Shown: positions 5,950 through 28,992 of the stretch, one piece after another | Layout: each line of letters opens with the position of its first letter | Position numbering within the stretch: the stretch's first letter is position 1 | Assembly: GCF_039654945.1 (NCBI RefSeq) | Contig: NW_027361707.1 | Span: forward strand, 36,270,001-36,334,000 | Source: Dendrobates tinctorius | Taxonomy: Eukaryota | Length of the DNA: 64,000 nt | Direction: 5' to 3' | Translations under genes and position numbers: made by a program | Notes under the pieces: model-generated | Told to the model about the DNA's origin: nothing | Databases searched by the model: none | The model's input: only the letters and a program-made list of their open reading frames with translations

Positions 5950-6058
5950 GGCAAGATGGCTACAGCGGCAGAATTCACTGGTAACCCGCTCTTCTCCCCA
6001 CCGAGGCTTTGGCACAGTTGATGTACTGCAGCTTTCGCCATTCCATAGGCAATCATTC
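5950..6058 (-). CDS. QDPR: Dihydropteridine reductase, coding exon 5 (109 bp)
   Basis: ttttttag|GA ATG ATT GCC TAT GGA ATG GCG AAA..TTG CC|gtaag. Translates as [37 protein letters not shown] and contains the SDR YxxxK motif. Confidence 0.96.
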
Positions 6059-6603
6059 CTAAAAAAGACAATCATGAAAGTTGCCATTTTCTCTAAAAAC
6101 ATCAAACAATGTTATTTTGCTCGGATGCTATTCCATTTCTGCAATGCTTTACGTTTAACACCAGTGTTCTCAGCCATGTCTGCTTGTGAAGCTGCAGGCT
6201 TTGAGCTCGGTGGACATTCTCTGTGAAACATTCTGTCTCTTCTTCCTTGCCCTTTGTTGTAGCCTGCGAGTCTTAAATCACACAATTGTGTTTTTCAAAG
6301 AGAAAATATATCGAGGGAATCTACTCCAAAGAAACCAACACGATACCTGAGGTTAATACCAACCCGCTCTAGCCATAGCTGCCTCAGTGCCAATGAGTAG
6401 GTTAGCAGTGGAGCAATATATCATTAATATTAACGATTACACAAAAGGTTTGTTAGTAGCATGTAACCTTAGTGAAGCAAATGAATCAGTGTGATGCACA
6501 TAGATTGGCACAGGAGCTGTACACATAAAACATCTTCAGTGGTGCTACTTAGACCTAAGAAAAAAAGATTTCTTCTGCTCTGGTCCAGTGTAGAGTCTGG
6601 TTT

Positions 6604-7829
6604 TCTGTGGCAGCCAGGCCAGAGTAGTCCACCTCCTCTGTGGCAGCCAGGCCAGAGTAGTCCACCTCCTCTGTGGCAGCCAGGCCAGAGTAGTCCACCT
6701 CCTCTGTGGCAGCCAGGCCAGAGTAGTCCACCTCCTCTGTGGCAGCCAGGCCAGAGTAGTCCACCTCCTCTGTGGCAGCCAGGCCAGAGTAGTCCACCTC
6801 CTCTGTGGCAGCCAGGCCAGAGTAGTCCACCTCCTCTGTGGCAGCCAGGCCAGAGTAGTCCACCTCCTCTGTGGCAGCCAGGCCAGAGTAGTCCACCTCC
6901 TCTGTGGCAGCCAGGCCAGAGTAGTCCACCTCCTCTGTGGCAGCCAGGCCAGAGTAGTCCACCTCCTCTGTGGCAGCCAGGCCAGAGTAGTCCACCTCCT
7001 CTGTGGCAGCCAGGCCAGAGTAGTCCACCTCCTCTGTGGCAGCCAGGCCAGAGTAGTCCACCTCCTCTGTGGCAGCCAGGCCAGAGTAGTCCACCTCCTC
7101 TGTGGCAGCCAGGCCAGAGTAGTCCACCTCCTCTGTGGCAGCCAGGCCAGAGTAGTCCACCTCCTCTGTGGCAGCCAGGCCAGAGTAGTCCACCTCCTCT
7201 GTGGCAGCCAGGCCAGAGTAGTCCACCTCCTCTGTGGCAGCCAGGCCAGAGTAGTCCACCTCCTCTGTGGCAGCCAGGCCAGAGTAGTCCACCTCCTCTG
7301 TGGCAGCCAGGCCAGAGTAGTCCACCTCCTCTGTGGCAGCCAGGCCAGAGTAGTCCACCTCCTCTGTGGCAGCCAGGCCAGAGTAGTCCACCTCCTCTGT
7401 GGCAGCCAGGCCAGAGTAGTCCACCTCCTCTGTGGCAGCCAGGCCAGAGTAGTCCACCTCCTCTGTGGCAGCCAGGCCAGAGTAGTCCACCTCCTCTGTG
7501 GCAGCCAGGCCAGAGTAGTCCACCTCCTCTGTGGCAGCCAGGCCAGAGTAGTCCACCTCCTCTGTGGCAGCCAGGCCAGCGTAGTCCACCTCCTCTGTGG
7601 CAGCCAGGCCAGAGTAGTCCACCTCCTCTGTGGCAGCCAGGCCAGAGTAGTCCACCTCCTCTGTGGCAGCCAGGCCAGAGTAGTCCACCTCCTCTGTGGC
7701 AGCCAGGCCAGAGTAGTCCACCTCCTCTGTGGCAGCCAGGCCAGAGTAGTCCACCTCCTCTGTGGCAGCCAGGCCAGAGTAGTCCACCTCCTCTGTGGCA
7801 GCCAGGCCAGCGTAGTCCACCTCTGTGGC
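6604..7829. repeat. 33-bp minisatellite, about 37 near-identical copies, in QDPR intron 4
   Basis: Unit TCTGTGGCAGCCAGGCCAGAGTAGTCCACCTCC. Only two variant units (GCCAGCGTAG), near 7580 and 7811. Confidence 0.98.
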
Positions 7830-8774
7830 ATCCTTGTCCTGGCATCCTAGATGCCTCTTGAACTTGACAGGCCCAGCAGCATCATGACGTTAAAGAAAGG
7901 AGAAGAGATCCAGTGCCACGGAAATTAAAAATCTTTATTGATACATATTAACAATTCATCCATATTGGCAAAGAACAGTAAAAACCACCAACGTCACGAT
8001 GTGCATTGTGCTGGAAACTGTTGTTGAAAGACCCAGTAAGTGAAGAGATGCCAATGATGCCAGACCAAGGGTGCCACCGCAGACTTGAAGACCGCTGTCA
8101 TGTAGGACTGGACTGGACACCGAAAGAGGGCAGCACAAATGATAATTTATTTCACTAAATATGTAACAAATTATGTAAGAAAGTATATAACAAATCAAAC
8201 TTTATTTTTGTTTGCTTTTTAATCATGGATATTGTAATTAGATATATTTTCTTCTGCAATTTGTTTTAATTAGGCCAAACAAGCCTGTGGAGGACATTGC
8301 CCAACACATGTGTAACACATACCGTCTCCTCCAAAATGAGACGCACATGTCCCATAGACACAGAGACATTCCTGAGGGCCCCTGGATGTGGTTTCCAGGA
8401 TGAGACAATGGGACATTATTCTTTATGTTGCACAACAGACATACATGGCCCTGACATTATTAGGTCTCCCAGCCTTCATTTCAGTCTTCATTTCAACTTC
8501 GTGAAGCAGGAAATCACTGACTGTTTCAGGACAAATGGCTGAGTCTACCAGGAGGCAAAGGTCTCTTTACTCAGGACACGGACACACTCACCATGTAAGT
8601 GGAGAAATCCTGAAATCAGATCTACAGAGACTACATGTAGGCCAGATCCTCACGGGGTAGCAATCTGGAGATGGTAATAGGTGTTACTACTCCCCAATGC
8701 CCAGAAATAAAGAGCAAATTAAAGCTAATAACATGCCAAGAAAACCTAATTTTTTCAAAATATCTAATATAAAC

Positions 8775-9995
8775 TATATGTACAAACGTACTGGGATACC
8801 TGCACATTACATCTACAGGAACTTTGAGGACATCCCATAGTAAATCCATACTTATTACTAGGAGTTGGTTGCCCTTTGCAGCTATAAACAGCCATTACTC
8901 GTCTGGGAACATTTTCCCACAAGATTTTGGAGGTGTCTGTAGGGATTTCTGCCCAATCATCCAGAACATTTGCGAGTCTCACAATCGCTGTTCTAGTTTA
9001 TCCCAAAGATGATGGATGAGGTTCTTCTTCTCGCATCAAACTCCCCCAACCATGACTTTATGGATCTTGCTTTGTGCTCTGGGAACAGTCATGGGGAACA
9101 CAAATGGGCCTTCCCTAAAAAGTTTCCACGAAGTTGGAAGCTACAATTTTCAAAAAGGATTAAGACTTCCCTTCCCAGGAGGCAAGGGGCATATGCAGAT
9201 CCCTGAAAAACCACCCACATAACGTTATCCCTCCTCCACCAAACTTTACAGCTGGCACAATGCAGTCGACAAGTAACATTCTCCTTGCATTCACCAAGCC
9301 AAGACTTGTCCAGCAGACAGAGTAGTCACTACACAGGACATGTTTCCTCCTGATGTTCAGCATTGTGATGCAGCTGCTCAGCCAGTGTGTTTGTGCCGAT
9401 GTCAATGCCAGATGAGCTTTGGACTCTGCAGTTATGGAGTCAGCGGAGTGTTGGCGACCTCTGCTCCTCATTCGGTGACCCCGCTCTACAGGAAATGGTC
9501 TCCACTTCGGAGTTACTGCAGTTTCTTCCACTTCGTAATATTATCACTCACAGATGATGGGGAAGATTTAGGAGGGAAGAAAGTCATGATCGGACTTGTT
9601 ACACCAGTGGTTCCTAATACAGGACCACGCTGTTATCAGTGAACTCATAAATCATCCTGTCGCACATCATATTCCACAGCACTTTACTGAAATTACTGCT
9701 GTACCCACTGGGGTTCACAATCTAAATCCCCTATCAGTTGGTCTGTGGACTGCGAGGGAAATCAGAATATCCAGAGCAAACCCATGCAAACACGGGAAGA
9801 ACAAACTTCTTGCAGATGTTCTCCCAGGACCCCAGCGCTGCAAAGCAGTAGTGCTAACCACTGAGCCACTGTCCCACCTCACTCATTAGTAAACTCAGAC
9901 CGTAAACCAAGAGGCCAGATAATAAACAACGGGGGAAATGAAGAGTTCGATTCGATGATTAAGATGGGTGTCCCAATACTTTTCTCCTTAGAATA
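8775..9995 (-). mobile_element. Decayed Tc1/mariner-like element with an internal SINE-like insert (about 9660-9880)
   Basis: Ends resemble each other in inverted orientation (AAACGTACTGGGATACC / GGTGTCCCAATACTTT). Remnant peptide 'CIVPAVKFGGGGITLCG' resembles the Tc1 'PTVKHGGGSIMVWG' motif. Confidence 0.7.
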
Positions 9996-10059
9996 TATGT
10001 TTATTCATCCGTTATGCCGTTTATGTATTTTTTCCTGCGGCCAATATCCTGGCCTTTAC

Positions 10060-10200
10060 CTGGAGTAGCGGATAATCCAGCATTCGCCCCGGATAATGTG
10101 AGCAGGCCGCCTTCTTTCAGGTGTTTCGTAGCTAGGTGACTGGAAATGGTCGATGTCCAAACACTCTGCTTCCACATGAGATCACAATTCTTATAAAAAG
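10060..10200 (-). CDS. QDPR: Dihydropteridine reductase, coding exon 4 (141 bp)
   Basis: ttttcag|CT TTT TAT AAG..ACT CCA G|gtaaag. Translates as [47 protein letters not shown]. Confidence 0.96.
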
Positions 10201-11603
10201 CTGAAAATCAAGAAAACAGAAGCGAAGGGAATCATTCAGTAGGTTTTTGCTATGTACTCTGAGAAAAGCGAACTGTAGAGACCTTGATTCCAGCGATCTG
10301 TCACTTACTGTGTTGCATGCAGCAGTTTTGATAGAATCCCTGTTTTCCCTTCTGTAGCAAAGCTAAGAATGCGGAGCTCTGTACATGGTCAGCAAGCTGT
10401 GTACATTGGCAGCTTGCTGACAATCAGTGGTAGTGGAGGAGTTACACAGATTAGCTGGACTGCTGTGATGTGACCCCTAGTCCTGTAGTGACATGCTTCT
10501 GCTGATAAAACACTGATTGTATTGAAATTACAGAAAATAGCCCAGTAAGTGACATCATTGGAATCAGGGTCTCTGCCCCTACATTATACTGCACTCAGAT
10601 TAAATAGCAGACCCCTGCTGACAGATTCTTTTTTTCAAGCCAGTTGAATTAAGCTGAGATGCACATATGTTCTAAAGAGTTTTTTTTTTCCCCATAGTCA
10701 TAATTGAGGCATGAACACCAGGCTGCAGTCCCTTTTTCTGAATGACTGGAGATCTGACAGAAACCCGGCGATTAAAGTATTCCATTCTCATATGACACTT
10801 GGATAACATGATATTTTAGATATGTTCCCGGATTTTTTTTTTATTATTCTTTTTAAATTACAGTGAGGAACCAAGCTCACAAAAAAAAAAAAAAAGGGAG
10901 AAGCTATATAGTTACACAGAAATCCTTCATTGGACTGGAAAGAAAGGACGTCCGGACCATCAGATGATCTTGCAGCTAGAAAAAAGCAAGTCAATTTGCA
11001 GGACCCTCGTTCTGCAGCAACATCGGTGGTCCGTGGCTGCTGAAAGGGAGCCCTGTGAGCAGCCTCCTACCAGAATCCAACGCGCCTCTTGATTTTTCAG
11101 CCCGGCACGGTCAGCATTGTGATGTGATGCAGGCACATTGAATCAGGTCTATTACTCCAACAAGGCGCTGGGGTCTCTGGCAGGTAGGAAGCAGCTCGCA
11201 GGGCACAATCCGCTGGACCGGGCTCCTGCAAATCATCTCACTTATTTCTAGCAGTTACCCATTGTGGCCGCAGCAGTCGGATCATTGATGGACCCGATGT
11301 CATCATTTGTGGTCCAGCAGACACCAGGGCTCCCCACCATTATTCTTTTCAGAAAGATGGAAAATCCCTCTAAAATCAATGACATATCCAAATCCACAGA
11401 GAAAAAAAAAAAGCTAGAATACTTTGCCTCTTACAGATCAATAGAGCAAATGCACACGGGTTATCGTTCCTGCCAACTAATGATTAACTACCGAAGACAG
11501 GGATCTGTGCAGCAACGTCCAGGCAATATTCAGGCTTTCAATGATAGAATACATTGCACATTTACTCACAATTGACCCAATTTACATCTAATATCAACCT
11601 TAA

Positions 11604-14170
11604 CAGATTCTGTTTGGGTAAGAATACAAGGACAGAACAATGGAAAGGACACCATTGTAGGCATTTACTACAGGCCGCCTGTGCAAGCTGAAGATATGGA
11701 TGAACTCTTTATGCATCAAATGGCCAAGTTCTCCAAAAAATATGACATAGTTGTCATGGGAGATTTCAACTATCCAGACATTTGTTGGGAATCTCTCTCA
11801 GGCAAAACTAACAGGTCAAGGAAATTCTTATCCTCTCTTGCTGACAACTTTATCTTCCAAAAGGTAAGGGAGAAAACAAGGGGAACTGCTACCTTGGATC
11901 TAATCCTTATAAACAGGGAGGAAATGGTTGAGGAGGTAAAAGTGGCTGGGACCCTAGGAGGTAGCGACCATGCTATTTTAGAATTTGGGATAACTAGAGG
12001 AGGAAGACCTGTGAAGACTCAGACGTCAAGGTTAGATTTCAGAAAGGCAGATTTTAAGGGATTCAGAAAGAGAATTGGAGGGATCCAATGGCTGGATATC
12101 CTTAAAGACAAAAATGTCCAGGAAGGATGGGAAATCTTGAAAAATGAAATTCTCAAAGCACAATTGTTAACAATTCCGAAAAGAGGGAAGAATAGGAAGC
12201 ATTTAAGGAAACCAGGATGGATGAACACAGAACTCAAGCACATGCTAAAAAGGAAGAAAGAAATGTTTATAAAATGGAAAGAGGGAGGCATATCTAAAGA
12301 AGAATATAATGCTGTCTGCAGAACCTGCAGGGCACAAATCAGATTACTAAAGCTGACAATGAATTGAGGCTTGCAAGAGATGTCAAAAGCAATAATAAAG
12401 GATTTTGGGGATATGTCAAAAGTAAAAGAAAAGTCATAGATGCTATAGGATTTTTACAGGATGAAAATGATGAAATGGTAAGACAGGATGTTGAGAAGGC
12501 CGAACTTTTAAATTCCTATTTTGCATCTGTTTTCTCTTAGAAAGGAAATGTAACATCAACTGTTCTTCACTGTCCTATTAAGGGAATAGAAGAATCCAGG
12601 ATATCTAAACAGAAAGACAGTGAGGAAACACTTAGCTAACCTAAATGAATTCAAGTCTCCAGGTCCAGATGAATTACACCCCAGAGTACTGAAGGAGATA
12701 GCAGAAGAAATGTTTGAACCCCTCTCCATATTCTTTGAAAATTCTTGGAGAACAGGAGAAGTCCCAGAAGACTGGAGAAGAGCAAATGTTGTTCCTATCT
12801 TCAAAAAGGGGAAGAAGGTGGACCCAGGCAACTATAGCCCGGTGAGTCTGACTTCTATACCAGGAAAGATCTTTGAACAAATTATTAAACAACATGTATG
12901 TCAGTACCTGGATAAGAATGAAGTGATTAAACAGAGTCAGCATGGGTTTGTAACTAATAAGTCATGTCAGACTAACTTAATTTCCTTCTATGACGGAATC
13001 ACTGATTGGGTGGATCAAGGAAATGCTGTAGATATAGTATATCTTGACTTCAGCAAAGCAATTGACAAAGTATCTCATACAATCCTTATTGAAAAAATGA
13101 CTAAGTATGGAATGGACAAGGCAACTGTTAGGTGGATTCATAACTGGCTTAGTGATCGGACCCAAAGAGTGGTCGTAAATGGCTGCACATCCAGTTGGAA
13201 GAATGTCTCAAGTGGGGTACCACAGGGCTCTGCCCTGGGCCCTGTATTGTTCAACATCTTTATCAACGATTTAGATAAAGGAATTGAGGGTAAACTGATT
13301 AAATTTTCTGAGGACACAAAGCTAGGAGGGATAGCTAATACTAGAGAAGAGAGAGAGAGGATTCAAAAAGATATAAATAAACTGGAGCAGTGGGCAGCAA
13401 CTAACAGAATGGTTTTTAACAGGGAAAAATGCTAAGTACTACATCTGGGCAATAAAAATGAAAAAAGCATATACGGAATGGGAGGAATAGGACTAAGCAA
13501 CAGCACATGTGAAAAAGACTTGGGTATACTAATAGATCACAGACTGAATATGAGTCAACAATGTAATGCAGCAGCAAAAAAGGCAAATGCAATTCTAGGA
13601 TGTATTAACAGAAGCATACAGTCTAGATCACGGGAAGTCATAATTTCCTTCTACTCCTCTTTGGTCAGACCTCATCTGGAATACTGTGTCCAGTTTTGGC
13701 CACCACATTTTAAAAAAGACATCAACAAACTGGAGCAAGTTCAGAAAAGAGCGACCACAATGGTGACCGGTCTGCAAACCCTGTCTTATGAGGAAAGGTT
13801 GCAGGATTTGGGAATGTTTAGTTTGCAAAAGAGAAGACTGAGAGGAGACTTAATAACTGTCTACAAATATCTAAAGGGCTGTTACATTGTAGAAGGATCA
13901 ACTTTATTCTCATTTGCACAAGGAAAGACTAGAAGCAATGGGATGAAACTGAATGGGAGGAGACACAGATTAGATATTAGAAAAAAACTTTTTGACAGAG
14001 TGATCAATGAGTGGAACAGGCTGCCACGAGAAGTGGCGAGTTCTCCTTCAATGGAAGTCTTCAAACAGAGGCTGGACAGACATCTGACTCGGATGATTTA
14101 GCGAATCCTGCTTTGAGCAGGGGGTTGGACCAGATGGCCCAGGAGGTCCCTTCCAACTCTACGATTCTAT
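11604..14170 (+). mobile_element. CR1-clade LINE, 5'-truncated, ORF2 broken; antisense in QDPR intron 3
   Basis: APE endonuclease tail ('GDFNYPDI','TLDLIL','SDH') and RT ('GVPQGSALGP','YLDFSKA'). The catalytic FADD has become FSED, with several stops and frameshifts. The CR1-type 3' end is GGTCCCTTCCAACTCTACGATTCTAT. Confidence 0.95.
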
Positions 14171-16002: not shown

Positions 16003-16048
16003 GCTGGACCCGAAGAAGCGAGTAATCGTGAAACGGCCGTTGTCCGGC
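16003..16048 (+). ncRNA. Minimal type I hammerhead ribozyme-like motif within a Penelope-like fragment (to about 16175)
   Basis: GCTGGAC-CCGAAGA-A-GCGA-GTAA-TCGT-GAAA-CGGCCG-TT-GTCCGGC: 7-bp helix I, GNRA-capped helix II and palindromic helix III. AATAAA and GGTGAGTG follow downstream. Confidence 0.7.
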
Positions 16049-16972
16049 TTTCACCTCCCCCAACATTCCTCTCACGTCCTGCTTGTCCTTTCATCTGTCC
16101 GTGGCACGGTTGTGAAATAAAGGCCATTTAACTTTTCAGCTCAGCCGGTGAGTGTTGCATTTTTTCTTTATTTACTATATATATGTTTGCATAACCGTTT
16201 TCTGAGATCCATATTTATATTTTTTTCTTTAAGATAAATATTGGATGAAAACTTTCATGGGAGGATGAGGAGGGCTTCTTTAATGTCATGTCAGAGGATG
16301 ACCGTGGCATTTAAATGATCGGAGCTAGCTCTGGTCACTGCTAACTGTATAACACAGCCTGACCCAACACGTTAACACTTCATAGACATGAACGTCACAT
16401 GTAGGAGAGCAGTTGAGGGACGTTATAGCCTGAAAATCTCATCCTAAATATAGAGCAGATGTACACACCGCCATGCTGAGCGGCACATGGATTTTATCAC
16501 CGTGTCAATAAAAGGGGATAGTTTTAGCAACCCTTTTCACAAATTGATGCCAGCACTACGGTCAGCTGCAGAAATCCCTGACAATCATCAGATGACTGGC
16601 AGCTATTGAAGGCTTTTGGCATCACCTAATTAGGGACCCAGACACCATCCGGCTGAGCTAATGCACTGATCACAATAATATCTCCTGCATGATACATGTA
16701 CTGTCTATAAAAGTGGAACGTTCCCGATGTATCCAACCACAAGAGACATCGTAGGGCCACAGCCACATGTAGGGACTCGAGGACGAGGTAGCACTTCTCA
16801 GATATCGTCACTGGATAGTTTGCTCTTACAGTAATTACATCGGACCTTTGATAGGAAATTAAATAATCAGAGCATCCGTTCTATCATGGTTGTCACTGTA
16901 CACATCAGTCGGCATCCAGTAACCTGGGGCTGTGCAGACGCGATGTGGACAGACGGCCGCCCGCTGACTCAC

Positions 16973-17065
16973 CACTTCTGCTTGCTCGGAGAAAGAATCG
17001 GACGGTTTAACAACAACGTTGGCATTTGCGGCTGCGTTTTCTGTTATGTCTATGGATGCCACCCA
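16973..17065 (-). CDS. QDPR: Dihydropteridine reductase, coding exon 2 (93 bp)
   Basis: cgcag|TGG GTG GCA..GAA GTG|gtgagt. Translates as [31 protein letters not shown]. Confidence 0.96.
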
Positions 17066-17387
17066 CTGCGGGAATAAAAGGGAGACAGTAAAAGCAAGAA
17101 TAAGGCAACATTATAAAAAGGGATACCAACATCTACATATAGCAAAAAAAAAAAGGGGGGGGGGGGAGAGAGACAAAGCGCAATAGGGTCTCATCCACGT
17201 TACAGGATAGAGTCTAACATGAAATCTGCTCACCTGGTTAGGATGAGATAAGAGCATGTAGGTAGCGGCTGCTGCAGATCCACAGGTCCTCAATGACCAG
17301 AAGAAATTATATAGTCAAAGGGAATTCATAGTTATATTCCGCACTAAGGCTGGGACAAATTCCAGGAGAATGCTGTAGGATTGCAGC

Positions 17388-17440
17388 GGTTTTATTCAAC
17401 GCGTTTCAGGGGTCTCATGCCCCCTTCATCAGGAAATACC
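17388..17440 (-). ncRNA. Minimal type I hammerhead ribozyme-like motif (Penelope-like fragment), on the sense strand of QDPR intron 1
   Basis: The minus strand reads GGTATTTC-CTGATGA-AGGGG-GCATGAGA-CCCCT-GAAA-CGCG-TT-GAATAAAACC, with an intact CUGAUGA/GAAA core. Confidence 0.7.
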
Positions 17441-17793
17441 ACACGGAATATAACTACGAATTCCCTCTGAATACGACATCTACATATAGGCAAATCTGGC
17501 ATCTCAGCTGAGACTCCTGTTCTGCTCTATGGGACAGGTCTCCAGTATCCCAGCAATGGAAACAACTAGAATGGAGGCAGCAGGGCAGGTCCGCCATGGG
17601 GCACCAAAACTTGTGCTCCAAAAAAACTTTTTTATCCAGGACTGCCTGTTGACATCATCTACATGCAATCCATGGATCAGCTCTGCTACACATGCATCTG
17701 GGCAGCGACTCCTGGACACAGGTGACCACTGTACCTGTCCAGCACCACAGTGCCCCTATCACACAGAGGACACAGGAAAACAAAGCCACTCAC

Positions 17794-17892
17794 CCAGTTC
17801 CTGGACTTGAAGTAGTCCACGCACCTGGAGCCCAGGGCGCCTCTGCCCCCGTACACCAGCACGCGCTGAGCATCACTAGCAGCAGCCGCCAT
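17794..17892 (-). CDS. QDPR: Dihydropteridine reductase, coding exon 1 (99 bp)
   Basis: ATG at 17892. Translates as [33 protein letters not shown]|gtgagt, with the Rossmann GGxGxxG motif. Confidence 0.97.
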
Positions 17893-17954
17893 CTGCACAG
17901 CCGGGAGAGGAAAGCGGCGCCGCGCCACACACTGTCACACAAGAGGCAGGCGCT

Positions 17955-18092
17955 GAGCCCGCCCCCTCTGACGTCACCCTGCCGTCAAACACGGGCCCAC
18001 GCTAAAGTGACCTCGCTCTGACGTAGCGCGTTGTGATTGGACGCTGCGGGCAGCTGCTCTGCCTGGCAGAGTGGTCACATGATCCGCCCCTT
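17955..18092 (-). promoter_or_regulatory. CpG-rich QDPR proximal promoter
   Basis: GC boxes at 17958-17965 and 18084-18090, perfect CRE TGACGTCA at 17969-17976, half CRE at 18019, CCAAT on the minus strand at 18036-18040, and E-box GTCACATGA at 18074-18082. Confidence 0.7.
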
Positions 18093-18364
18093 AGTGTCTG
18101 TGTGTGTTTATGGTCTGTCCGTCACACAGTGGTCGCAGGTTGCGGCCGTCGCCGCTCTCGTATCAGTCTCTGAGCAGGGTGTCATCTATGGAGCGCGGCT
18201 GTAGCGTGGGCAGCTCACAAGCGGGGAGCGCTCTCCCCCTCTGTACCTTGAGACACCCCTTCTGTAGGGCTTGATGTTAATTTAGGGGTCTGAGGATAAA
18301 TATAAATATAGGGTTTTGGTAGGAGGTATAATATTCATATAGGGTCTGGTGTAGGCTCTGATAA

Positions 18365-19124: not shown

Positions 19125-21876
19125 TAACACACAGAAAAAAAAAAGCTTTAGAAAAATAATAAATTGCCATTTTTTGCTTTTTAGCCCCTTTTTAAATGGA
19201 TAAATGACAATCACTGCAACTGTAGAGACTTAAACTCTAAAGCTAATATGTCATTCAGCCCCACTAGTGAATGCTGTAAAAACTATTACAACACAAAGAC
19301 AGGATTGCTGAGCTCTTATCATCTCAAAATAAATTGAATAAAAACGTCACATGAATATAAGGATTATACCTATAAACTCCACAGTTCATACTGCAAAAAA
19401 AAAACCCTCAGCTTCCTCAACAAAAAAAATAAAAAGAGTATAGCTCTACAAATATAGCGAGACATATTTTTTTAAAATTACATTTTTATAAGATTTTATT
19501 GTAAAAAATATAATAAGATATTACGAAACTACACAAATTGGGTATTGCCATGTCTAATGACTAGAACTAAAATAAGGATGCAATTTATCAGACCCAGTAA
19601 GCGCAATGAAAAAAAAAGCCAAAATTGATGTTTAGTGTTATTGCCAGCAAAAAAATGTAATAAAAAGCTCTACAAAAAAAGTCATAAAATGGCACCAATA
19701 AAAACTATGTCCTGCAAAAAACAAGTCCTCATATACTCCTATCGACAAACATAAAAAAGTTGTGGCTCAATAGAGCAAAAAAATTTTTTAACCCCTTTCC
19801 ATCATCCGTCGTACATGTACAGCGCAAGCTGGTAGCGAGTGCGTGGAGTGGATTCATGGGATGAGCTCACCCCATACCGAGCAGGCAATGCCTGTGCGTG
19901 GACCTGCCTCTAACAGCTGCAGGTGGAGAAGAGCTTTGTCTGCAAATGTTAGGCTGCGTTCACAAGTTGCGTTTTTTTCGCGCTTTTGCTGTAATTTTCC
20001 TCTGCAAAAATGCTAAGAAAATGCATCCCATACAGTCCTATGGGACTCTCATCGCGGTAAAATCAGCAGCATGGTCATTCTTTTTGCGGAACTCTCAGCG
20101 TTTCCGCACCCATAGGAATGTGTGACGCCCTGTGTCTTTACCACCACAAAAGGGTTAAATATGTACTGTTTTGTATGTGTTTTGTGAGCAATGGGAGTTA
20201 TGCTTTCTCTTACACATTAGAGCTCCCATACACATTAGGCCCCATACCGTACACATTATGGCTTTCACATGTTGAATTTTAACACTCAATCTTTAGTACA
20301 GTTTACTCTCTCCTTCCCACACATGCACAGGGCTCCCTGGTACTTGTAGTCCCCCACAGCTCCTCGCATTACACGTCGGGGTCTTGTAGTCAATATTGTA
20401 GCGCAGCACCTCATACCCTTGTTCGGCGCTGCAAGGGTTAATGAGTGCTCCTGCCCCCTCGTGGTCGGGTGACCGCAGCACTCGCACACATCATCACTCT
20501 GCGACACCTGAGCTGTCTGTGTGGGGGACCCCGAGGGTGTGCTCCTGCTCTGCGGGCAGAGGCTGCCGGTGCTGCCTGTCTGCGTGGGGATGGCCGCTCT
20601 CCGTGCTCAGTACAGGGGAATATCCATGTTGCATCATTGCAGGAGGGGGACCCCGCAGTTTGCGTGGATTGCCCCGGAAGCAGAAACAGATCGAGCGGCC
20701 CAATACAGGCACCAGCCCTTCTGGCATTTGCCAGAAGTGCCCGATGCTCAGTCTGTCCCTGCCTGCAGGTAACTATTTTTAACAGCAAACTGGTGTCAAT
20801 AACTTTGCTAACACACTGCAATGAAATTTAAATGGAGGCCAGAAATGGAAGAATTTCGAGTGCACTTTTTATATGTGATCCGTGTGACGGACAAACCACA
20901 GATTTAAATAGATGGACTTTTAGCGCTGTAATATGGAAAGGATCTGGCTGTATTCTGCAGTGCCAACAATCAAATGGAGCAGAAAAACGGTGTTCTCTGG
21001 ATTGCTTTTTAAGCAAATAATCAGGATTAAGAGCCCCAAAAAATATTCCTGTCCCCTGATTCCTGGGGCTATGTCTAGTAATATCTGTAAAAGCCGCAGC
21101 AGCAAACAGAACTGGAATGGACCCTCTTGCTATATGCACTGCAGTCTGCCACATACACTGCCTAGCACTGATATCTATGCAGCTGGATTAGTCCTCAGAA
21201 GGACTGTTAGTTGAGATGGATATGTGTCAAATATTTTGTGGTATACCTACACTAACTAAGACACAAGCAAATCTATCCCTAGCTCAGCAGCAGCTCTACC
21301 TACACTGACTGATTCCAGAGCAGACTGTGACGAGCAGGGCGGCGCCAGGTCTGATATAGACCTGATGATGCTGTGCAGCCAGCCAATCACTGTAATGCCA
21401 CAACCAACATGGCTGCGGAGTTACAGTGTGTGGCAGACTATCCCTGCATGTTCATTGGCTCTCTCAAGAGCGCCAAACATGCAGGGTGGGGATCGGAGCT
21501 CCTGCTGAGCAGCCCTGGAAATAGCGAGTTCCGAGCATCTCGAGCAGTGAGATGCTCAGGCGAGTACTGAGTAGTGGCGAGCATGCTCGCTCATCACTAG
21601 TACTAACCAATATGTCTCTATGCATATAACTGCCTGTTGCTTGTAAATGATACTGTGAATATTGTTCTTGTGCATTTATCTGTGATAATAATCTTTCCCG
21701 CATTTAACCCTGTTACATAAATAAATTAAAAGTAGATTGTTGATCCCGCCTGTACATTGACATACTTCATGGACAAGAGCAGTAGTAACACCCAGTTGTG
21801 AATTTTTTTTATCAATTTTTAGGAGGAACAGTAGAGGAACGGCACAATGTCAAGGTATAAAGGAAGATGATTTACA

Positions 21877-22050
21877 CTCAGTGGTTAGCACTGTTTCTTT
21901 GCAGCGCAAGGAGTTTGTATGTTCTCCCCGTGTTTGTGTGGGTTTCCTCCATGCCCTCTGGTTGTGAGCCCCAATGGGGACAGTGATGGCAAAGTCTTTT
22001 AATGCTCTGTGGAATATGATGGCGCTATATAAGTGAGCATAATAAATACA
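21877..22050 (+). mobile_element. SINE remnant (tRNA-derived, V-SINE-like)
   Basis: CTCAGTGGTTAGCACTG head and TGTTCTCCCCGTGTTTGTGTGGGTTTCCTCC core. A reverse-orientation relative lies at about 9660-9880. Confidence 0.65.
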
Positions 22051-22509
22051 TGTAATACATTTTTTTAAGTAATGCAAGCATTTTAGTGAAACAGACATGT
22101 TAGGAGAGAAGGAGGCATGAAAGTGATAGAAATGATTTCCTTAGGAGAGATAAGGTAAGAGCTGTCCGTCTCGTGCTGCTATTCAGCAAATGTCATCTGA
22201 GTATTTGCCGAGGAGACAATGCAGCGGGCTGATGAAACACTAGTAGGGCCCTGGAGATAGGGTTACTGCCTCCAGGATCCAGCACTGGGTACACTCTGCT
22301 GAAGATCTTCATTGCCGGAAGCCCCTCCGCGTACAACCTGCATCACAAGGCTTCCTCCATATCGGCCCCCATCTTTGCCTTCACTGCAAGTAACCCAAAG
22401 CTAACAATGGAATGTCCCCAGGATCTGCATCCCCAGAGATGTGCCAGCGGTGACAAGCGGTGTCCTTACAGCAGGGCAGTGCCAGGGATGATTTCTTGAA
22501 CATTTTATA

Positions 22510-22762
22510 ATGCCGGGGTGCTTCAAGAAAACTATATTCTCCTTAGCTTCAGCATTAAGTTTCGTGTCGTTCTTGCTGATCGTTGTTGCCATGGCGACTC
22601 AAAAATGGATGACCGGGAAGACACTATGTCAGACAGGAGTTGATTTGGTCAATGCTTCTGATCCGGAGCTGGTCAAGTTTATTGGGGATATTTACTACGG
22701 ACTTTTTCAGGGGGGAAAAGTGCGCCAATGTGGATTGGGGAAGCGAAGTTTCACGTTCAAAA
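22510..22762 (+). CDS. CLRN2: Clarin-2, coding exon 1 (253 bp)
   Basis: [55 protein letters not shown]|gtgagt. Confidence 0.96.
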
Positions 22763-22999
22763 GTGAGTACATTATCATTGTGACTATGGGGATAAGTCCC
22801 ATTTCTTGTTACATGAAAATACGGTATATCTAATTTTTTAAGGAACAGATGACATTTAAAAAAAAAAGATTAATTGTGTATTCACACTGTGTAATGTATG
22901 TTTGGCGTATGCAACGGTAAAACTATTAACATAGACAATATGTCCAACATAGCCATAGGCCCCTGTTCATCCCATATTGGTCCAAAGGACATCCATATA

Positions 23000-23624
23000 C
23001 AGGGTGGGCCATTTATATGGATACACCTAAATAAAATGGGAATGGTTGGTGACCCAGATCGGCGCGATGAATTTGCTGAATGGGCAAAACAAAAACTGGA
23101 GCAGGACCCTTAGTTTACACAGAACATTATGTTCAGTGATGAGGCAAACTTTTTTGGGTGGGCCATTTATATGGATACACCTAAATAAAATGGGACCAGT
23201 GACAGTTTTCTTGCATAGGGTGTCTTGCATTGAAATCTGCTGCAATGACCCGGGTACTGCGTTCACCAGACATCAGCACAATTTCTATCTGCTCTTCACG
23301 TGTTAACCTCTGCGACATGTCAATGGCTGTAGACAAAGAGAAACTTGCAAATAACTCATGAAAAAAATAAAGTTATGTTAAAACCAAGCACACCATTGTT
23401 TTTCTTGTGAAATTCTCAATAAGTTTGATGTGTCACATGACCCTCTTCCCATTGGAAAAAATAAAGTTGGATCCAAAATGGTTGATTTCAAAATGGCCGC
23501 CATGGTCACCACCCATCTTGAAAAGTTTCCCCCCTCCCATATACTAATGTGCCAATAGCAGGAAGTTGATATCACCAACCATTCCCATTTTATTTAGGTG
23601 CATCCATATAAATGGCCCACACTG
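23000..23624. mobile_element. Non-autonomous Tc1/mariner-type element
   Basis: About 50-bp TIRs (CAGGGTGGGCCATTTATATGGATACACCTAAATAAAATGGGAATGGTTGGTGA), with TA on both flanks. A third partial TIR copy lies at about 23156-23193. Confidence 0.88.
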
Positions 23625-23639
23625 TATATGGATATATAT

Positions 23640-25440
23640 TCTCAACATTGAAATTGCAACACCAAGTAGGAAAAGTTGTGGAATTATGGAAATCAATAAA
23701 TCGATATATGTCAATTATATGGAAATGATGAAAAAAATGGAAGCAAAATTTTCCAAACATCTCGATCTATTCAGTATTATGACCACCACATGCCGAATGG
23801 CTGCTGTCAATGACATTATTAATGGTTGCCTGAGGAATGTTCTGCCACGCTGAATGCACTTTGGCAGCAAATCATCAAGATCCGCTCCTGGCAGCTCCTT
23901 TGTAATTACCGACCAATAACATCCCAGATGTGCTTGATGGGAAACAATTCTGGAGACATTGCAGGCCATAGTAGCACATTTAGGCCTCACAGTACCACAA
24001 GCAATAAGCAGTCTGGCATTGCTGTGTTGAAAAATAACTCCTGGGACACTTTGGAGAAATGGCAGTAGCATTGGTTCTACGACCAAATTAATGTAACGGT
24101 GATCTGGCTACCATACATTATGCCGCCCCACATCATAATCCTAGGAGTATAACAATTGTGATGTTCCCTCTTGAAGGCTTCTTCATGGTGGTGTCCAATT
24201 GCTCTAAAGACAAATCTCCGGCTGTCATTGCATTCAAGACAAAAGTGGGACTCATTGCTGAACAGGATAGACTTCCATTCTGTCACGGTCACTGTGTGTC
24301 TGGGCGCAAGTGTTACCGCAAGACGAACCCACAACACACGTGACCCTGGATACAGCGCCTCCAGTGGGGCGAATTTAAATAATAAAACGTGCAGATGGAT
24401 ACACCGCCTCCACCTGGCGAATTTAGGTATTACACGTTAATATAAATTCTGGAAACCCCGCCTCCAGTGCGGCGAATTTAAATAATAAGGGGGACCTGGG
24501 AAACATTAACAATGGTGGGCCCTGCGATAGGGAATAGGGAAGTGGAGACCTCCTGAGCTCCCCTGAGCCAGTGTCCCTGCACTCCTAACGTTCCCTATGC
24601 CTGTTCCGCACCGGGCACCGCACGCGTACCTCAAAGCCCTTGCTCGCCCTGACCCTAAACCCTCACTAGGGAATTGGTCGGTGCGGAAACTAATCCCACC
24701 ACTGCACTAACAACACACATGAGGAAAGAAGACAATACAGGGGGACACCACTTAGCTTTATGCTCTGTGCTTATGCTCCTGCAACAGAGCCCTCCACCTG
24801 CGTGCGTCTTCTCCTCCACCCGGATCCATCACCATAACAGGATCCTTCACCATAGTGCTGCCTAGGAGCAGAGTCCACCACCAGTTGCTGCTGCTTAGTA
24901 ACAGAGTCCCAAAGATGAGTTCAGCTTCTGACACGAAGTCAAGCATGCTTGAGTCCAGCTCAGCAGCCAAGTCCCACATGGTGAGTGCCACTCTCCATAG
25001 TCGCCACTCCACCAGTCCATGCAGACACTTCCCGCTGATACCATCACTGCGACCCCACCACGCCATGCCAGCCCTTCGTCCAGACACCATAGCTGACACA
25101 CTTCCCCCCTGGCTAAGCTGCGCAGGACTCCTCCTCAGCTCCATCCTTCCACCAGGCTCTCACCAACTCAGAATCCATGAAAGAATGAATGAATATCACC
25201 AGCCGTGATTGCACACCCTGAGACTCATTTATAGAGCCCCACACCTGAATCATAATTACAGAGAACTTTAAACTGAAAACCTAAGGTGCGATACCACTAA
25301 CCACCACCGGGGACAGTCAAGTCACCTTGGCAACTTGCCAAAAGGAAAAAAGTTCACTCTGTGCTTTTAAAACTGTCAGATCACTTCAGATCATGACACA
25401 TTCCAGCCACCATTGCCATCTTACTCTGCACTATGATAGC
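23640..25440 (-). mobile_element. Decayed Tc1 transposase split by a solo LTR
   Basis: Peptides 'EWKSILFSNESHFCL','IMMWGGI','IFQHSNAR'. The frame resumes across the 24281-25398 insert. Boundaries are approximate. Confidence 0.75.
24281..25398. mobile_element. Solo LTR
   Basis: TGTCAC...ATGACA ends, with 5-bp TSD CATTC at 24276-24280 and 25399-25403. Confidence 0.85.
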
Positions 25441-28084
25441 CTTTAAAACAGGTGTTGTGATGTCAATAGAGCACCTGTAATTGGACGTCTGGCTCGGAGC
25501 CCAATGTTGGGCACACTCCTTCAGATGGTTTTTTAAATCCGTTTGATGTCTTAAACTTAGTATGTGATGTCTAAGTTCACTTGCAGTATACAATGGATCA
25601 ATTATTTTCCCAGGGGTATGGCTATTTCTCCAAAGTATCCCAAGTGCTGTTTTTCAACATGACAACACCATTCCACATGATGCTGATGCTACTGTGAGTA
25701 GCCTAAATGTGTTACCAGGCATCTGTAGGGTCTCCAGACTTGTCATCCATCAAGCACATCACATCTGGGACGTTATTTTTCGGAACTTCCAAAAGGAGCT
25801 GCCAGCAGAGGATCTTGATGGTTTCCGTGACAAGTATCTTTCCATCTATCATATCGGCAAAGCTAATAGGTAAAATATACCACTGTGTGCCTATACAGAT
25901 ATTGGAATAGGTTGGGGCTTACTTGATAAACTTGTGGGTGCAAGTGAAGGAAGTGTGGAAACCCCTAATGTCAATGTCCATAAAGGACTCAATGCTCACG
26001 CTCTGGTATAATGCAGTCAATGAAATATTAGTTTATTTTCAAATATGTAAATTCTGGAGGATAGTCTTCTCCGTCGACCAAAATAATCTCACTTTTTGAC
26101 TCTCTGGGGTCTTTGTAAGAAGGTCACTGGGTGACAAACGTAAAATAAATATTACTTACATATGTACAACCAGTTGATTATAAAATGAATATTGTCAGCT
26201 ATGCAAAATAGCCATTATAAAGCAAGTGGAGCAGAATTGTATACTAAATTATACTTCAACAAGCATGTATTACAGATGTGATGAGGTCTAATTTGTAAAT
26301 GCATCGATGGTATGAATGCAAATACATAAAGAAACCATACATATTGTACTGTATATATATATATGTATATAATAATTTCTGAGTCAGTGCTGACACATAA
26401 AAATACATACACTATGAAGCATACACCAGTCTGGACAAGACTGACATGTGCATGAAGTGGCTGTATCGTAAATGCGTAAATAATATTTATTGTACGTTTG
26501 TCACTTAGTTCTACAGAAAATCTCATTTTTGTGCTTTCCATCCCAGCAATCTCCTCAACAAAGACCCGGGAAGGTCGAGATGACACGTAATTTTGTCACC
26601 AGAGTAGTGTATCCTACTGAATTTCTGTATTAGAAAATAAACAAATATTTCATTTATTGCATTTTGCTAAAGAATGATCATTGGATCCTTTATGGTTATT
26701 GCCTGTACAGCTATACGTAGGCTAATCTTACTGGTGTATATTTTCAACGTACACTGCAAATACCACGTGAATGCCAAGAAGATGAGCAAATCTGCCAAAG
26801 AATAATTTACTGGAAATAGACTGTACAATAATGTGCATCGTTCTGGTGTGAGACCCTCTCCAGACCACAGAACATAATAACCAGGGAAAACAAAATGAAA
26901 AAAAAATCATACTCACCTGTCCTGCCTTCACCTGTCCCCCACGCAGCCCTGCTCTGGTCCTCATGTCTTCTTCTGTCTGGTCACTGATACATTCTCATCA
27001 TCTTATCTATGGAATGCATCCACGGAAGAGAGTTGTAAATTAAGGTGTAATAAAACAACCATTGGAGACAAGGTGAAATGTGAAGTCATTGGGTGGTAAG
27101 GTTTTTCCCATGCTTTCACATTAGGAAAGCTGGGGGGAAGGCATGCCATCCAGGCAAAAGGCTCCAATACACAGATGAAAATTGGCTGAACAGATTTCAA
27201 CAGGACCGGCCGACGATCTGATTCTTATGGGGGCTCCTGACTCTTAGAGGTGATGTTGGGGGAGAGAAGGTGTCTGGTAGCGGCTTTCTTCTCTCTCCTG
27301 CGCTCTTGTATATAGGGGAGTTGGGAGTCGTAACGAGCATTTGGCCAACAACTATCTCATGAGTGTGTCCAGTTTTAGCTCCTAACGCATAGTTTTTGTC
27401 CCCTGTGCTATGAAGTTGTCACTTTTTGATAATTTGATTGCATGGTTTGGAACTGTTAAAGGAAAGAGATAGCATAAGATTTAATAAATCTGGGGACATG
27501 TAACTCATCCATCAAAACTATCTACACCATCGATCGGTACATAAAGCAATCTCCATGCACATCCCAGGGTCAGGCCCCCATACACATTAGGCTAATGTCG
27601 GCCGACCCTGACAATGGTCTGATGTTTATGGCGGCACCAGATGACTGTCGATTGGGGAAGATGTCTATCGCACATATCCGATTTCGAACTGCGGATCATA
27701 TTGTTCTGTCAGAGATCAGCCACCAGTAGAGACGTCAGTCCGCAACTTTGTCATAGAGAACACAGGAACACTCGGCTGATCGACCGCTCCTGTGTACGGG
27801 AGACTCTGCTGTGATTACTGTCAGCTGAAATATCAGCCAATTCAAAGTTCATGCAATAAGTCATCAAATGTGTATGGCCAAGATAATAGACACAAGTAAC
27901 AATGGTGCCCTATAGCAAAACTTCTAATGAACTCACAATGGCTACCGTCAGAGGGAAGATCGGAACGTGAAAAGTGTAGGATTATTTTGGTCCCCCGCCT
28001 TTTTTCACTAGTTTTAAATCCACAATCACACTTGCCGATCCTAATCAAACTCCACTTTGTCTCTTTTGTGTGTTGAAAGGCTTA

Positions 28085-28813
28085 GGCCATGCTCACATGT
28101 CTAGTCATCCGTTAGAACGGATCCAGCAGTGATCTGTTGACAAAAAAGTTGTGCTCACACAAAAAAAAATCTGATTTCTACTGGATCCAATTTTTTAACA
28201 TTGAAGTCTATGGAAAATGTATCCGTTAGCGATCTGTTTTCTTCCATTTGAAACTGATCCAGCCAACAAAAAATAGATCCTTTCAAATTAAAGAAAAACA
28301 GATAGCTGATTAACAGATCCTTTTTCCATAGACTTCAGTGTTAAAAATTGGATCTGGATGAAATCAGTTTTTTTTTCAGCTGGACCTAAAAGTTCTGTCT
28401 GCACAACTTTTTTGGCCATGATTTGCTGCTGGATCTGTTCTAACCAGGTACGGACTGGGGCTGAAATTCATCCCTGGCATTTGAAATCACACCGGCCCAT
28501 GCTGTCCCTTTCCCCAAGCACCAGATGGGAGATATTACTAATATTACCCTGGATGGAGGAAAGACAGATTTACTATAAGACCAATATTTCTAATAATACC
28601 CGTGGCCTGCTGGAATAAGTGACGGAGTCAGCGACTTTTTGCTTTCTCACAACACTTAGCAGTATGAGTGTCTTGAGAACACCGATTCTGTTAACAACGT
28701 AGCAGACAAGGCAGCCCATGACCAGACAAGCCCTTCTGACATTTGCCAGAATTGCCAGATGACCTGTCTGGCCCTGGTTCTAACGGATCATTTCTGAACA
28801 TATGAATATCGCC
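28085..28813. mobile_element. Harbinger-type MITE containing a nested hAT MITE (28445-28776)
   Basis: Outer element has TTA flanks and inverted arms. Inner element is CAGGTACGGACTGG..CCTGTCTGGCCCTG with an exact 8-bp TSD GTTCTAAC (28437-28444, 28777-28784). Confidence 0.8.
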
Positions 28814-28992
28814 TTAGTAGTTACTGTATGACAGTCGCCCAAGTGAAACAGAAGGTTGGACATGTTTGGTTTTCACTCGTCAAAATATTATTGGAAAATG
28901 TAGTCATTTTGGGGTTTTTTTTAATGTAGTTTTTATGGAGGATTCATTATGATTCAGTCATGTAGTAACAGTATTGTGTTTTCTGCTTCCAG

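What the first reader, a model, noticed from the sequence alone, without database searches (positions are those of the whole stretch)
17388..17440. Hammerhead motif with an intact core on the sense strand of QDPR intron 1
Seen: the minus strand has CTGATGA, a 5-bp helix II (AGGGG/CCCCT), GAAA, palindromic ACGCGT, a GUU site and a short bulged helix I (TATTTC/GAATA). An AATAAA overlaps it, about 350-400 nt downstream of the exon 1 donor. It is therefore part of every QDPR pre-mRNA. Inference: a transposon-derived cleavage plus poly(A) cassette that could attenuate a BH4-recycling gene. The weak helix I and GUU triplet predict low monomer activity.
Basis: partly seen in the sequence, partly recalled or inferred. 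Interest (0 to 1): 0.7.

Follow-up and report, generated by a model that had tools for sequence, protein, structure and literature searches.

The report
Solo frog hammerhead retrozyme in intron
The hammerhead motif is real, but it belongs to a single ~324-base copy of a very abundant frog "retrozyme" repeat sitting in QDPR intron 1; this ribozyme type needs two copies to cut well, and the RNA data show normal splicing and read-through, so it is ordinary.

Summary
Observation confirmed. On the minus (QDPR sense) strand, 17444-17386 carries a complete type I hammerhead. It has CUGAUGA, a 5-bp helix II, GAAA, one A-U pair closing a palindromic CGCG loop, and a GUU site cut at 17398|17397. AAUAAA lies at 17396-17391, about 400 nt into the 728-nt intron 1.

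It is not a host-built cassette. It lies in a ~324-nt insertion (17147-17470) flanked by a ~24-nt target-site duplication. In a DNA run of the same frog, summed contig depth on the motif is thousands of times that of the unique flanks. The 54-59-nt hammerhead is the most widely shared piece.

Size, long duplication and helix III match published amphibian non-LTR retrozymes, which depend on Penelope-like elements. Their ribozymes cleave well only as dimers in tandem copies. Only one copy is present here.

RNA contigs show abundant exon 1-exon 2 splicing. One exact 232-nt contig runs uncut across the cleavage site and the AAUAAA. No Rfam hammerhead model matches.

Attenuation of QDPR is unsupported, though contigs cannot exclude rare cleavage. 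This scan has already noted many such intronic frog hammerheads on other DNA of this genome. It is a new member of a known kind and of low interest.

The parts
17386..17444 (-). Complete type I hammerhead module, with both helix I strands, the core, helix II and a minimal helix III. It is the piece most widely shared among the frog's repeat copies.
   Evidence: Sequence. A 61-nt fold gives helix I plus helix II. In DNA run X1, summed contig depth is 21,800-27,000 over 17372-17459 against 4.67 on the unique flanks. Sharp loose ends lie at 17391 and at 17443/17444.
17426..17432 (-). CUGAUGA core box (C3-A9).
17408..17425 (-). Helix II hairpin AGGGG-GCAUGAGA-CCCCU. Its base pair is A10.1-U11.1; the alternative register has a bulged A with a G-U wobble.
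   Evidence: both registers were found by the descriptor.
17399..17407 (-). GAA of the core, followed by the ACGCGU palindrome. As a monomer it forms only one pair, A15.1-U16.1, closing a CGCG tetraloop. Between two copies it forms an intermolecular helix III.
   Evidence: Sequence. Co-folding two copies gives -37.3 kcal/mol, against 2 x -13.5 for the monomers, with an intermolecular AACGCGUU helix.
17397..17398 (-). Predicted cleavage site, after U17 of GUU (17398|17397). About three quarters of the family depth has A here (GUA).
   Evidence: Position follows from the hammerhead numbering applied to the sequence. Variant 17398 A>T on the + strand accounts for 7639 of 10273 depth in X1. Cleavage itself was not shown.
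17391..17396 (-). AAUAAA hexamer. It lies in the helix I 3' strand and internal loop of the hammerhead and is nearly invariant in the family.
   Evidence: One search lists only one minor variant within it (17394). The X6 contig covering 17278-17509 reads through it.
17147..17470 (-). Retrozyme-like insertion of ~324 nt, a single unit. It ends in a CTCTCTC(C)n(T)n tract at 17148-17182.
   Evidence: It is bounded by the duplicated target site. The repeat depth seen in X1 spans about 17183-17465. No internal duplication and no second copy in the window were found.
17471..17494 (.). Target-site duplication, copy on the gene-upstream side.
   Evidence: Local alignment with 17123-17146 has 22 identical positions, one mismatch and two one-base gaps. 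None of 2000 shuffles reached its score.
17123..17146 (.). Target-site duplication, copy on the gene-downstream side.
   Evidence: (families D1 and D2, spacing 347).
17444..17473 (-). 5' arm of a 30-nt inverted repeat. With 17312-17341 it closes a long stem around the hammerhead and two small hairpins.
   Evidence: I1, 90% complementary. Fold z-score -6.9. 'Opposite strands' joints at 17442-17444 in other copies suggest that this is a family feature.
17312..17341 (-). 3' arm of the same inverted repeat. It is internal to the insertion, so it is not a terminal inverted repeat.
17066..17793 (-). QDPR intron 1 (728 nt). The insertion makes up about 45% of it.
   Evidence: The spliced joint 17794>17065 is seen in RNA contigs of X6 (depth 191) and X7 (depth 160).
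17794..17957 (-). QDPR exon 1 (ATG at 17891). RNA contigs end at 17957 and run into sequencing adapter there.
   Evidence: adapter loose ends at 17957 in X5 and X6.

Best explanation
The motif is the resident ribozyme of one solo unit (~324 nt, 17147-17470) of an abundant frog non-LTR retrozyme. Such elements are thought to be non-autonomous and mobilised by Penelope-like elements. This unit was reverse-transcribed into QDPR intron 1 in the sense orientation and left a ~24-nt target-site duplication.

In its family, the hammerhead processes multimeric element transcripts. The palindromic ACGCGU of two neighbouring copies pairs to form a shared helix III. A lone copy has only a single-pair helix III and cleaves poorly.

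In QDPR it is therefore a passenger in a short, efficiently spliced intron. The AAUAAA is part of the ribozyme's helix I strand, not a demonstrated poly(A) site.

Shown here: the motif, the insertion boundaries, the high copy number, the single-copy state, the splicing and the read-through. Inferred: the family assignment, the dimer mechanism and the lack of effect on QDPR.
For: **Anatomy**
- The core is complete and all three helices can be drawn.
- The chance rate is low.
- The target-site duplication is significant.

**Repeat status**
- In DNA run X1, summed contig depth is three orders of magnitude above the unique flanks across 17196-17460.
- It peaks on the hammerhead, where no variant reaching 10% is listed between 17400 and 17443.
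- The flanks of those copies are heterogeneous.

**Single copy**
- The window holds no second copy.

**Match to published amphibian retrozymes (PMC7229834)**
- Published units measure 330-350 nt.
- Their helix III is a single pair closed by a palindromic tetraloop.
- A monomer cleaved 6% in one hour, while dimer constructs cleaved much more efficiently.
- Their target-site duplications are longer than 4 bp.

**Frog data from a preprint (10.64898/2026.07.22.740005)**
- About 44% of Xenopus retrozyme copies are intronic.
- Only 1 of 9 dimer constructs cleaved in vitro.

**Folding**
- Two copies co-fold through the palindrome.
- The monomer hammerhead fold costs +7.5 kcal/mol relative to the best fold in a 181-nt context.

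**RNA**
- Spliced exon 1-exon 2 contigs have depth 160-191.
- An exact contig covering 17278-17509 spans the cleavage site and the AAUAAA.
Against: - No Rfam hammerhead model matches, even on 81 nt at E<=10.
- The base pair of helix II is A-U (or G-U with a bulged A), not the G10.1-C11.1 called highly conserved in PMC4209133.
- Proximal helix I has only 3 contiguous pairs.
- No other copy could be fetched, so the family's unit, its tandem forms and its link to Penelope-like elements are inferred from depth tables and papers, not from an alignment.
- No intron contig covers 17066-17190 in any RNA run. This could reflect loss downstream of the element. A low-complexity tract and low depth explain it equally well.
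- Contigs cannot show RNA ends.
Confidence: 0.8

Rival explanations
1. One reading: the sense-strand hammerhead and the overlapping AAUAAA act together as a premature cleavage and polyadenylation cassette that lowers QDPR output.
For: - The core is intact, on the sense strand, and 396 nt into intron 1.
- AAUAAA is followed by CA dinucleotides and a UUUGU about 45 nt downstream.
- Intron contigs in X5 and X7 cover 17491-17756, but none covers 17066-17190.
Against: - Only one copy of a dimer-type ribozyme is present. A comparable axolotl monomer cleaved 6% in one hour (PMC7229834), far slower than splicing of a short intron (the splicing rate is my own knowledge).
- The exact X6 contig covering 17278-17509 reads through both signals.
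- No loose end with a poly(A) tail appears among those listed (112 rows were not shown).
- Depth of the intron upstream of the element is about 0.05% (X5) to about 2.4% (X7) of exon 1 depth, so no stable truncated transcript accumulates.
- The AAUAAA is a family-wide part of helix I.
- Poly(A) sites this close to a 5' splice site are generally suppressed by U1 snRNP (my own knowledge, not tested here).
Confidence: 0.07
2. The hammerhead-like arrangement is a coincidence within a repeat consensus. The family is an ordinary SINE- or satellite-like repeat with no ribozyme activity at all.
For: - No Rfam hammerhead model matches.
- Helix II has an atypical A-U base pair and helix I is interrupted.
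- In the preprint, 8 of 9 predicted Xenopus retrozyme dimers did not cleave in vitro.
- Across all repeat consensus sequences of a genome, a relaxed descriptor hit by chance is not negligible (my extrapolation).
Against: - All invariant core positions are present, together with the palindromic loop 3 that is the hallmark of amphibian hammerheads.
- The module is the best-conserved part and is shared among copies whose flanks differ, which points to constraint on the module itself.
- The family variant at 17387 turns a U-G pair of distal helix I into U-A.
- Unit size and the long target-site duplication match retrozymes.
Confidence: 0.1
3. The lone intronic hammerhead is cleaved in trans-assisted fashion. 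Abundant retrozyme RNAs from elsewhere in the genome pair with it through the ACGCGU palindrome and complete helix III.
For: - Other family copies are present in the RNA runs, with summed depth of 600-5300 in the repeat bins of X5.
- Two modules co-fold favourably.
Against: - The intermolecular helix is only 6-8 bp, so pairing between separate transcripts at cellular concentrations should be rare (inference).
- A read-through contig exists.
- There is no end evidence.
Confidence: 0.03

Closest known systems
Amphibian non-LTR retrozymes / newt satellite-2 type I hammerheads (Epstein & Gall 1987; Cervera & de la Pena 2020, PMC7229834)
   Same: - It is a type I hammerhead.
- Helix III is a single pair closed by a palindromic tetraloop.
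- The unit measures a few hundred nt (324 nt here, 330-350 nt in axolotl).
- The fold is a long, largely base-paired stem, rod-like or branched.
- The target-site duplication is longer than 4 bp.
- Copy number is very high.
- The architecture depends on dimers.
   Different: - This is a solo unit, not a tandem array.
- Helix II is 5 bp with an 8-nt loop and an A-U base pair, against the canonical 4 bp with G-C.
- Helix I has 3 pairs, an internal loop and then 5 pairs, instead of 6 contiguous pairs.
- The conserved loop 1-loop 2 contacts could not be recognised.
- The triplet is GUU in this copy.
Minimal hammerheads of Penelope-like elements (Cervera & de la Pena 2014, PMC4209133)
   Same: - Helix II is longer than usual and proximal helix I is short.
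[quoted passage not shown]
- Positions 15.2-16.2 are palindromic.
- Copies are mostly dispersed single motifs; about 9,000 are reported in Xenopus tropicalis.
- In vitro activity is low.
   Different: - No reverse-transcriptase ORF or terminal repeat of a Penelope-like element lies beside it.
- A loop 3 is present here, whereas minimal hammerheads usually have none.
- The G10.1-C11.1 pair is not met.
Conserved intronic hammerheads of amniotes (HH9, HH10; de la Pena & Garcia-Robles 2010; cited from my own knowledge and through PMC4209133)
   Same: It is a sense-strand type I hammerhead inside an intron of a protein-coding gene.
   Different: - Those hammerheads have a stable helix III, work as monomers and are conserved at orthologous sites.
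- The Rfam models for them do not match here.
- This one is a repeat copy of unknown age.

Membership tests
Hammerhead ribozyme, type I | The conserved core is present: C3 U4 G5 A6 N7 G8 A9, G12 A13 A14, an A15.1-U16.1 pair, and H17 at the cleavage site. | tested here: met
   CUGAUGA lies at 17432-17426, GAA at 17407-17405, A at 17404 pairing with U at 17399, and U at 17398.
Hammerhead ribozyme, type I | Three helices surround the core, with helix I open-ended. | tested here: met
   Helix I has 3+5 pairs and helix II has 5 pairs in the 61-nt best fold. Helix III is only one pair as a monomer and 6-8 pairs between two copies.
Hammerhead ribozyme, type I | The sequence matches a curated covariance model (Rfam Hammerhead_1, HH9, HH10, II or 3). 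| tested here: not met
   No hammerhead family was listed at gathering score or at E<=10, whether on 64 kb, 1.2 kb or 81 nt.
Hammerhead ribozyme, type I | The RNA self-cleaves at the predicted phosphodiester bond. | not testable with these tools
   Contigs cannot show RNA ends. One exact contig spans the site uncut.
Amphibian non-LTR retrozyme | It is a non-coding unit of a few hundred nt that carries a type I hammerhead with a weak helix III capped by a palindromic loop. | tested here: met
   The insertion is ~324 nt. The longest open frames across it are 30 and 67 codons, the longer running on past its 3' end. Helix III is A-U closing CGCG. Compare PMC7229834.
Amphibian non-LTR retrozyme | The family has a high genomic copy number. 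| tested here: met
   Summed contig depth in X1 reaches 27,000 against 4.67 on unique sequence. The tool warns that this is not a copy number, so only the order of magnitude is used.
Amphibian non-LTR retrozyme | [quoted passage not shown] | tested here: inconclusive
   This locus is a single unit. Other copies are present in the RNA runs, but their arrangement and circularity could not be seen.
Amphibian non-LTR retrozyme | The insertion is flanked by a target-site duplication longer than 4 bp. | tested here: met
   The duplication is ~24 nt with 22 identical positions, and 0 of 2000 shuffles reached its score.
Penelope-like element minimal hammerhead | [quoted passage not shown] | tested here: not met
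   The nucleotide before G12 is U at 17408. The only possible readings are A-U, or a bulged A with a G-U wobble.
Penelope-like element minimal hammerhead | It lies in a terminal repeat next to an RT/GIY-YIG ORF. | tested here: not met
   The insertion is 324 nt between duplicated target sites inside a 728-nt intron. No long ORF is present.
Functional intronic poly(A) site | RNA 3' ends with untemplated A lie 10-30 nt after the hexamer. | tested here: inconclusive
   None appears among the loose ends listed, and a contig reads through. However, only contigs were available and 112 loose-end rows were not shown.

The most novel reading that the evidence does not exclude
Solo sense-strand retrozyme hammerheads in promoter-proximal introns, such as this one, might be cut at a low but regulated rate. 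Abundant retrozyme RNAs from elsewhere could pair with them through the palindromic loop 3. With the family-conserved AAUAAA, this would couple host gene output to retrozyme expression.
Probability: 0.04. Interest if true: 0.6.

Novelty: new member of a known kind. Interest (0 to 1): 0.15.

Why it matters
It matters little on its own. The case documents one more intronic solo copy of a known class of amphibian ribozyme-bearing repeats, and it shows that a "ribozyme plus AAUAAA" pattern in a frog intron need not be a host device.

Two points are modestly useful.
- This family's hammerhead escapes every Rfam model, so covariance-model annotation undercounts frog hammerheads.
- The AAUAAA is built into helix I of a very high-copy module. 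Across thousands of sense-strand intronic copies, a genome-wide test with 3'-end sequencing could ask whether such copies ever terminate transcripts.

Tried and rejected
- **Rfam** was run at gathering score on the whole window, and at E<=10 on 1.2 kb and on 81 nt. It found no hammerhead family, only chance-level hits to unrelated families.
- **Other copies in the window.** A 3-mismatch pattern search, sensitive blastn and a hammerhead descriptor found none.
- **Other copies in public collections.** An exact pattern and a gapped pattern in metagenome and viral contigs gave 0 hits. No family alignment, covariation test or covariance model could therefore be built.
- **Earlier-findings look-up by sequence** returned nothing.
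- **MITE or DNA transposon** was considered because of the 30-nt inverted repeat. It was rejected: one arm is internal, 165 nt from the end of the insertion, and a ~24-nt duplication does not fit cut-and-paste elements.
- **Remnant of a 347-nt tandem duplication of the intron** was considered. It was rejected because only the ~24-nt ends repeat.
- **The bacterial promoter/terminator scan** is irrelevant for a frog gene.
- **A MAFFT alignment** of this hammerhead with the intron 2 relic misaligned the cores, so I compared the two by eye instead.
- **Species.** I did not try to name it beyond "a frog", which comes from earlier notes.

Full report
**1. What is in the sequence**

Read on the minus strand, 17444-17386 spells the following parts in order:
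- GUGUGGUAUUUC
- CUGAUGA (17432-17426)
- AGGGG-GCAUGAGA-CCCCU (17425-17408)
- GAAA (17407-17404)
- CGCG
- U (17399), U (17398)
- GAAUAAAACCGC

In hammerhead numbering, every invariant core position is present.
- A15.1 (17404) can pair with U16.1 (17399).
- H17 is U at 17398, so the predicted cut is 17398|17397.
- ACGCGU (17404-17399) is a palindrome.

Helix II has 5 pairs. Its base pair is A-U. In the alternative register it is a bulged A followed by a G-U wobble.

In the best fold of 61 nt it has three parts:
- UUC/GAA next to the core
- an internal loop (AU against UAAA)
- GUGGU/ACCGC (17442-17438 with 17390-17386)

AAUAAA (17396-17391) lies within the 3' strand and internal loop of helix I.

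A descriptor for this architecture found exactly this one site in the window. It requires the core boxes, a helix II of at least 4 pairs, a palindromic segment between 15.1 and 16.1, and U-H. In first-order Markov windows it found 0.013 sites per 64 kb. The stricter form found none in 150 windows.

**2. Gene context**

- Exon 1 on the minus strand starts at ATG 17891 and encodes [33 protein letters not shown], a QDPR N-terminus. It is followed by GTGAGT.
- RNA contigs of runs X6 and X7 join 17794 directly to 17065. They skip 728 nt with GT..AG ends on the gene strand.
- Intron 1 is therefore 17066-17793 and exon 2 is 16971-17065.
- The motif lies on the sense strand and the cut site is 396 nt into the intron.

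**3. It is a mobile-element insertion**

The stretches 17123-17146 and 17471-17494 are near-identical direct repeats.
- They share 22 identical positions, with one mismatch and two one-base gaps.
- No shuffle out of 2000 reached their alignment score.

They bracket 17147-17470, about 324 nt. On the gene strand this piece ends in a CTCTCTC(C)n(T)n tract.

I laid contigs of a DNA run of the same organism (X1) on 16800-18100 at 80% likeness or more.
- Summed depth is 4.67 on both flanks.
- It is 3,300-12,500 over 17196-17371.
- It is 21,800-27,000 over 17372-17459.

The tool warns that this is not a copy number, so I use only the order of magnitude. The insertion belongs to a very high-copy family.

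The most widely shared piece has sharp ends at 17391 and at 17443/17444, which makes it the hammerhead itself. Beyond those ends the other copies run into mutually dissimilar sequence (agreement 0.5-0.6). Between 17400 and 17443, no variant reaching 10% of depth is listed.

Variants beside the core:
- 17387 is A on the gene strand in all 33 contigs laid there. This turns the local U-G pair of distal helix I into U-A.
- 17398 is A rather than U in about three quarters of the depth, giving GUA instead of GUU.

A module held constant among copies with different flanks points to constraint on the module itself.

**4. Internal structure**

A 30-nt inverted repeat (17473-17444 with 17341-17312, 90% complementary) closes a long stem around the hammerhead and two small hairpins.
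- The fold gives -65.5 kcal/mol with a z-score of -6.9.
- One arm is internal to the insertion, so these are not terminal inverted repeats.
- 'Opposite strands' joints at 17442-17444 in contigs from other copies suggest that the stem is a family feature.

**5. Comparison with what is published**

Cervera and de la Pena (PMC7229834) describe amphibian type I hammerheads in these terms:
- They are carried on 330-350-nt non-LTR retrozyme units.
- A monomer cleaved 6% in one hour, while dimer constructs cleaved far better.
- When target-site duplications are present, they are longer than 4 bp.

Their 2014 paper (PMC4209133) reports about 9,000 minimal hammerheads in Xenopus tropicalis, mostly as dispersed single motifs tied to Penelope-like elements. 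Those motifs have a long helix II, a short helix I and palindromic 15.2-16.2, and their activity in vitro is low.

A 2026 preprint (10.64898/2026.07.22.740005) adds three points:
- Amphibian retrozyme consensus sequences average 316 bp.
- About 44% of Xenopus copies overlap introns.
- Only 1 of 9 dimer constructs cleaved in vitro.

The element here fits this kind in size, duplication, helix III and abundance.

It departs in three ways:
- Helix II has an A-U (or G-U) base pair instead of the conserved G10.1-C11.1.
- Helix I is interrupted.
- No Rfam hammerhead model matches.

I therefore file it as a hammerhead by descriptor and context, not by covariance model. I could not align it with other copies, because none could be fetched.

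**6. Does it act on QDPR?**

- The window holds only one copy, so no tandem partner exists to build helix III.
- Two copies co-fold through AACGCGUU at -37.3 kcal/mol, against 2 x -13.5 for the monomers.
- The monomeric hammerhead fold costs +7.5 kcal/mol relative to the best fold in its 181-nt context.

RNA contigs:

| Run | Spliced or exon contig depth | Intron 1 contig (exact match) | Intron contig depth |
|---|---|---|---|
| X5 | up to about 25,000-34,000 (exon bins) | 17519-17754 | 12.6 |
| X6 | 191 (exon 1-exon 2 spliced) | 17278-17509 (232 nt) | 5.3 |
| X7 | 160 (exon 1-exon 2 spliced) | 17491-17756 | 3.9 |

- The X6 intron contig crosses both the predicted cut site and the AAUAAA without interruption.
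- No listed loose end carries a poly(A) tail.
- No stable exon 1-plus-intron fragment accumulates.

Limits of this evidence:
- Contigs cannot show RNA ends or low-level events.
- A hammerhead-cut fragment would be unstable.
- No intron contig covers 17066-17190. Part of that stretch, 17137-17182, is the low-complexity tract the tool skipped.

Rare cleavage is therefore not excluded. Nothing supports a functional attenuator.

**7. Verdict**

'Transposon-derived' and 'low monomer activity' are right. The attenuation cassette is unsupported.

The thing is a solo amphibian retrozyme unit carrying its family's dimer-type hammerhead. Earlier notes of this scan show that the same genome holds many such retrozyme units of 317-352 nt, as well as sense-strand intronic hammerheads. 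This is a repeat sighting of a known kind on other DNA.

Noticed in passing
window 16005-16060, + strand (antisense to QDPR, in intron 2): A second hammerhead-like relic reads CUGGAC CCGAAGA A GCGA-GUAA-UCGU GAAA CGGCCG UU|GUCCGG. It has a 6-bp helix I and a palindromic loop 3, and the base of helix II has the same 'A, then G...U' layout as the intron 1 copy. Its core has C in place of the invariant U4, so it is probably dead.
   Followed up: partly
window 17148-17182, minus strand: The insertion ends in CTCTCTC followed by a run of about 12 C and about 8-11 T, directly before the duplicated target. It is neither a poly(A) tail nor a tail I can assign to a known retroelement type. The read tool skipped this tract as a repeat.
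   Followed up: no
window 17957: RNA contigs of X5 and X6 end at 17957 and run straight into Illumina adapter sequence. This suggests a QDPR transcription start near 17957, giving a 5' UTR of about 66 nt.
   Followed up: no
window 17288 / 17391-17444: In several DNA and RNA contigs from other copies, sequence resembling 17265-17288 is joined to 17391/17392, skipping about 102 nt. In others, 17286/17287 is joined to 17443/17444 on the opposite strand. Some subfamilies thus seem to place the hammerhead at the tip of a hairpin made from a different pair of arms. The module appears to be shuffled among backbones.
   Followed up: no
window 17372-17459: Every Rfam hammerhead model misses this very high-copy frog hammerhead module. 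Annotation based on covariance models would therefore undercount hammerheads in this genome.
   Followed up: partly
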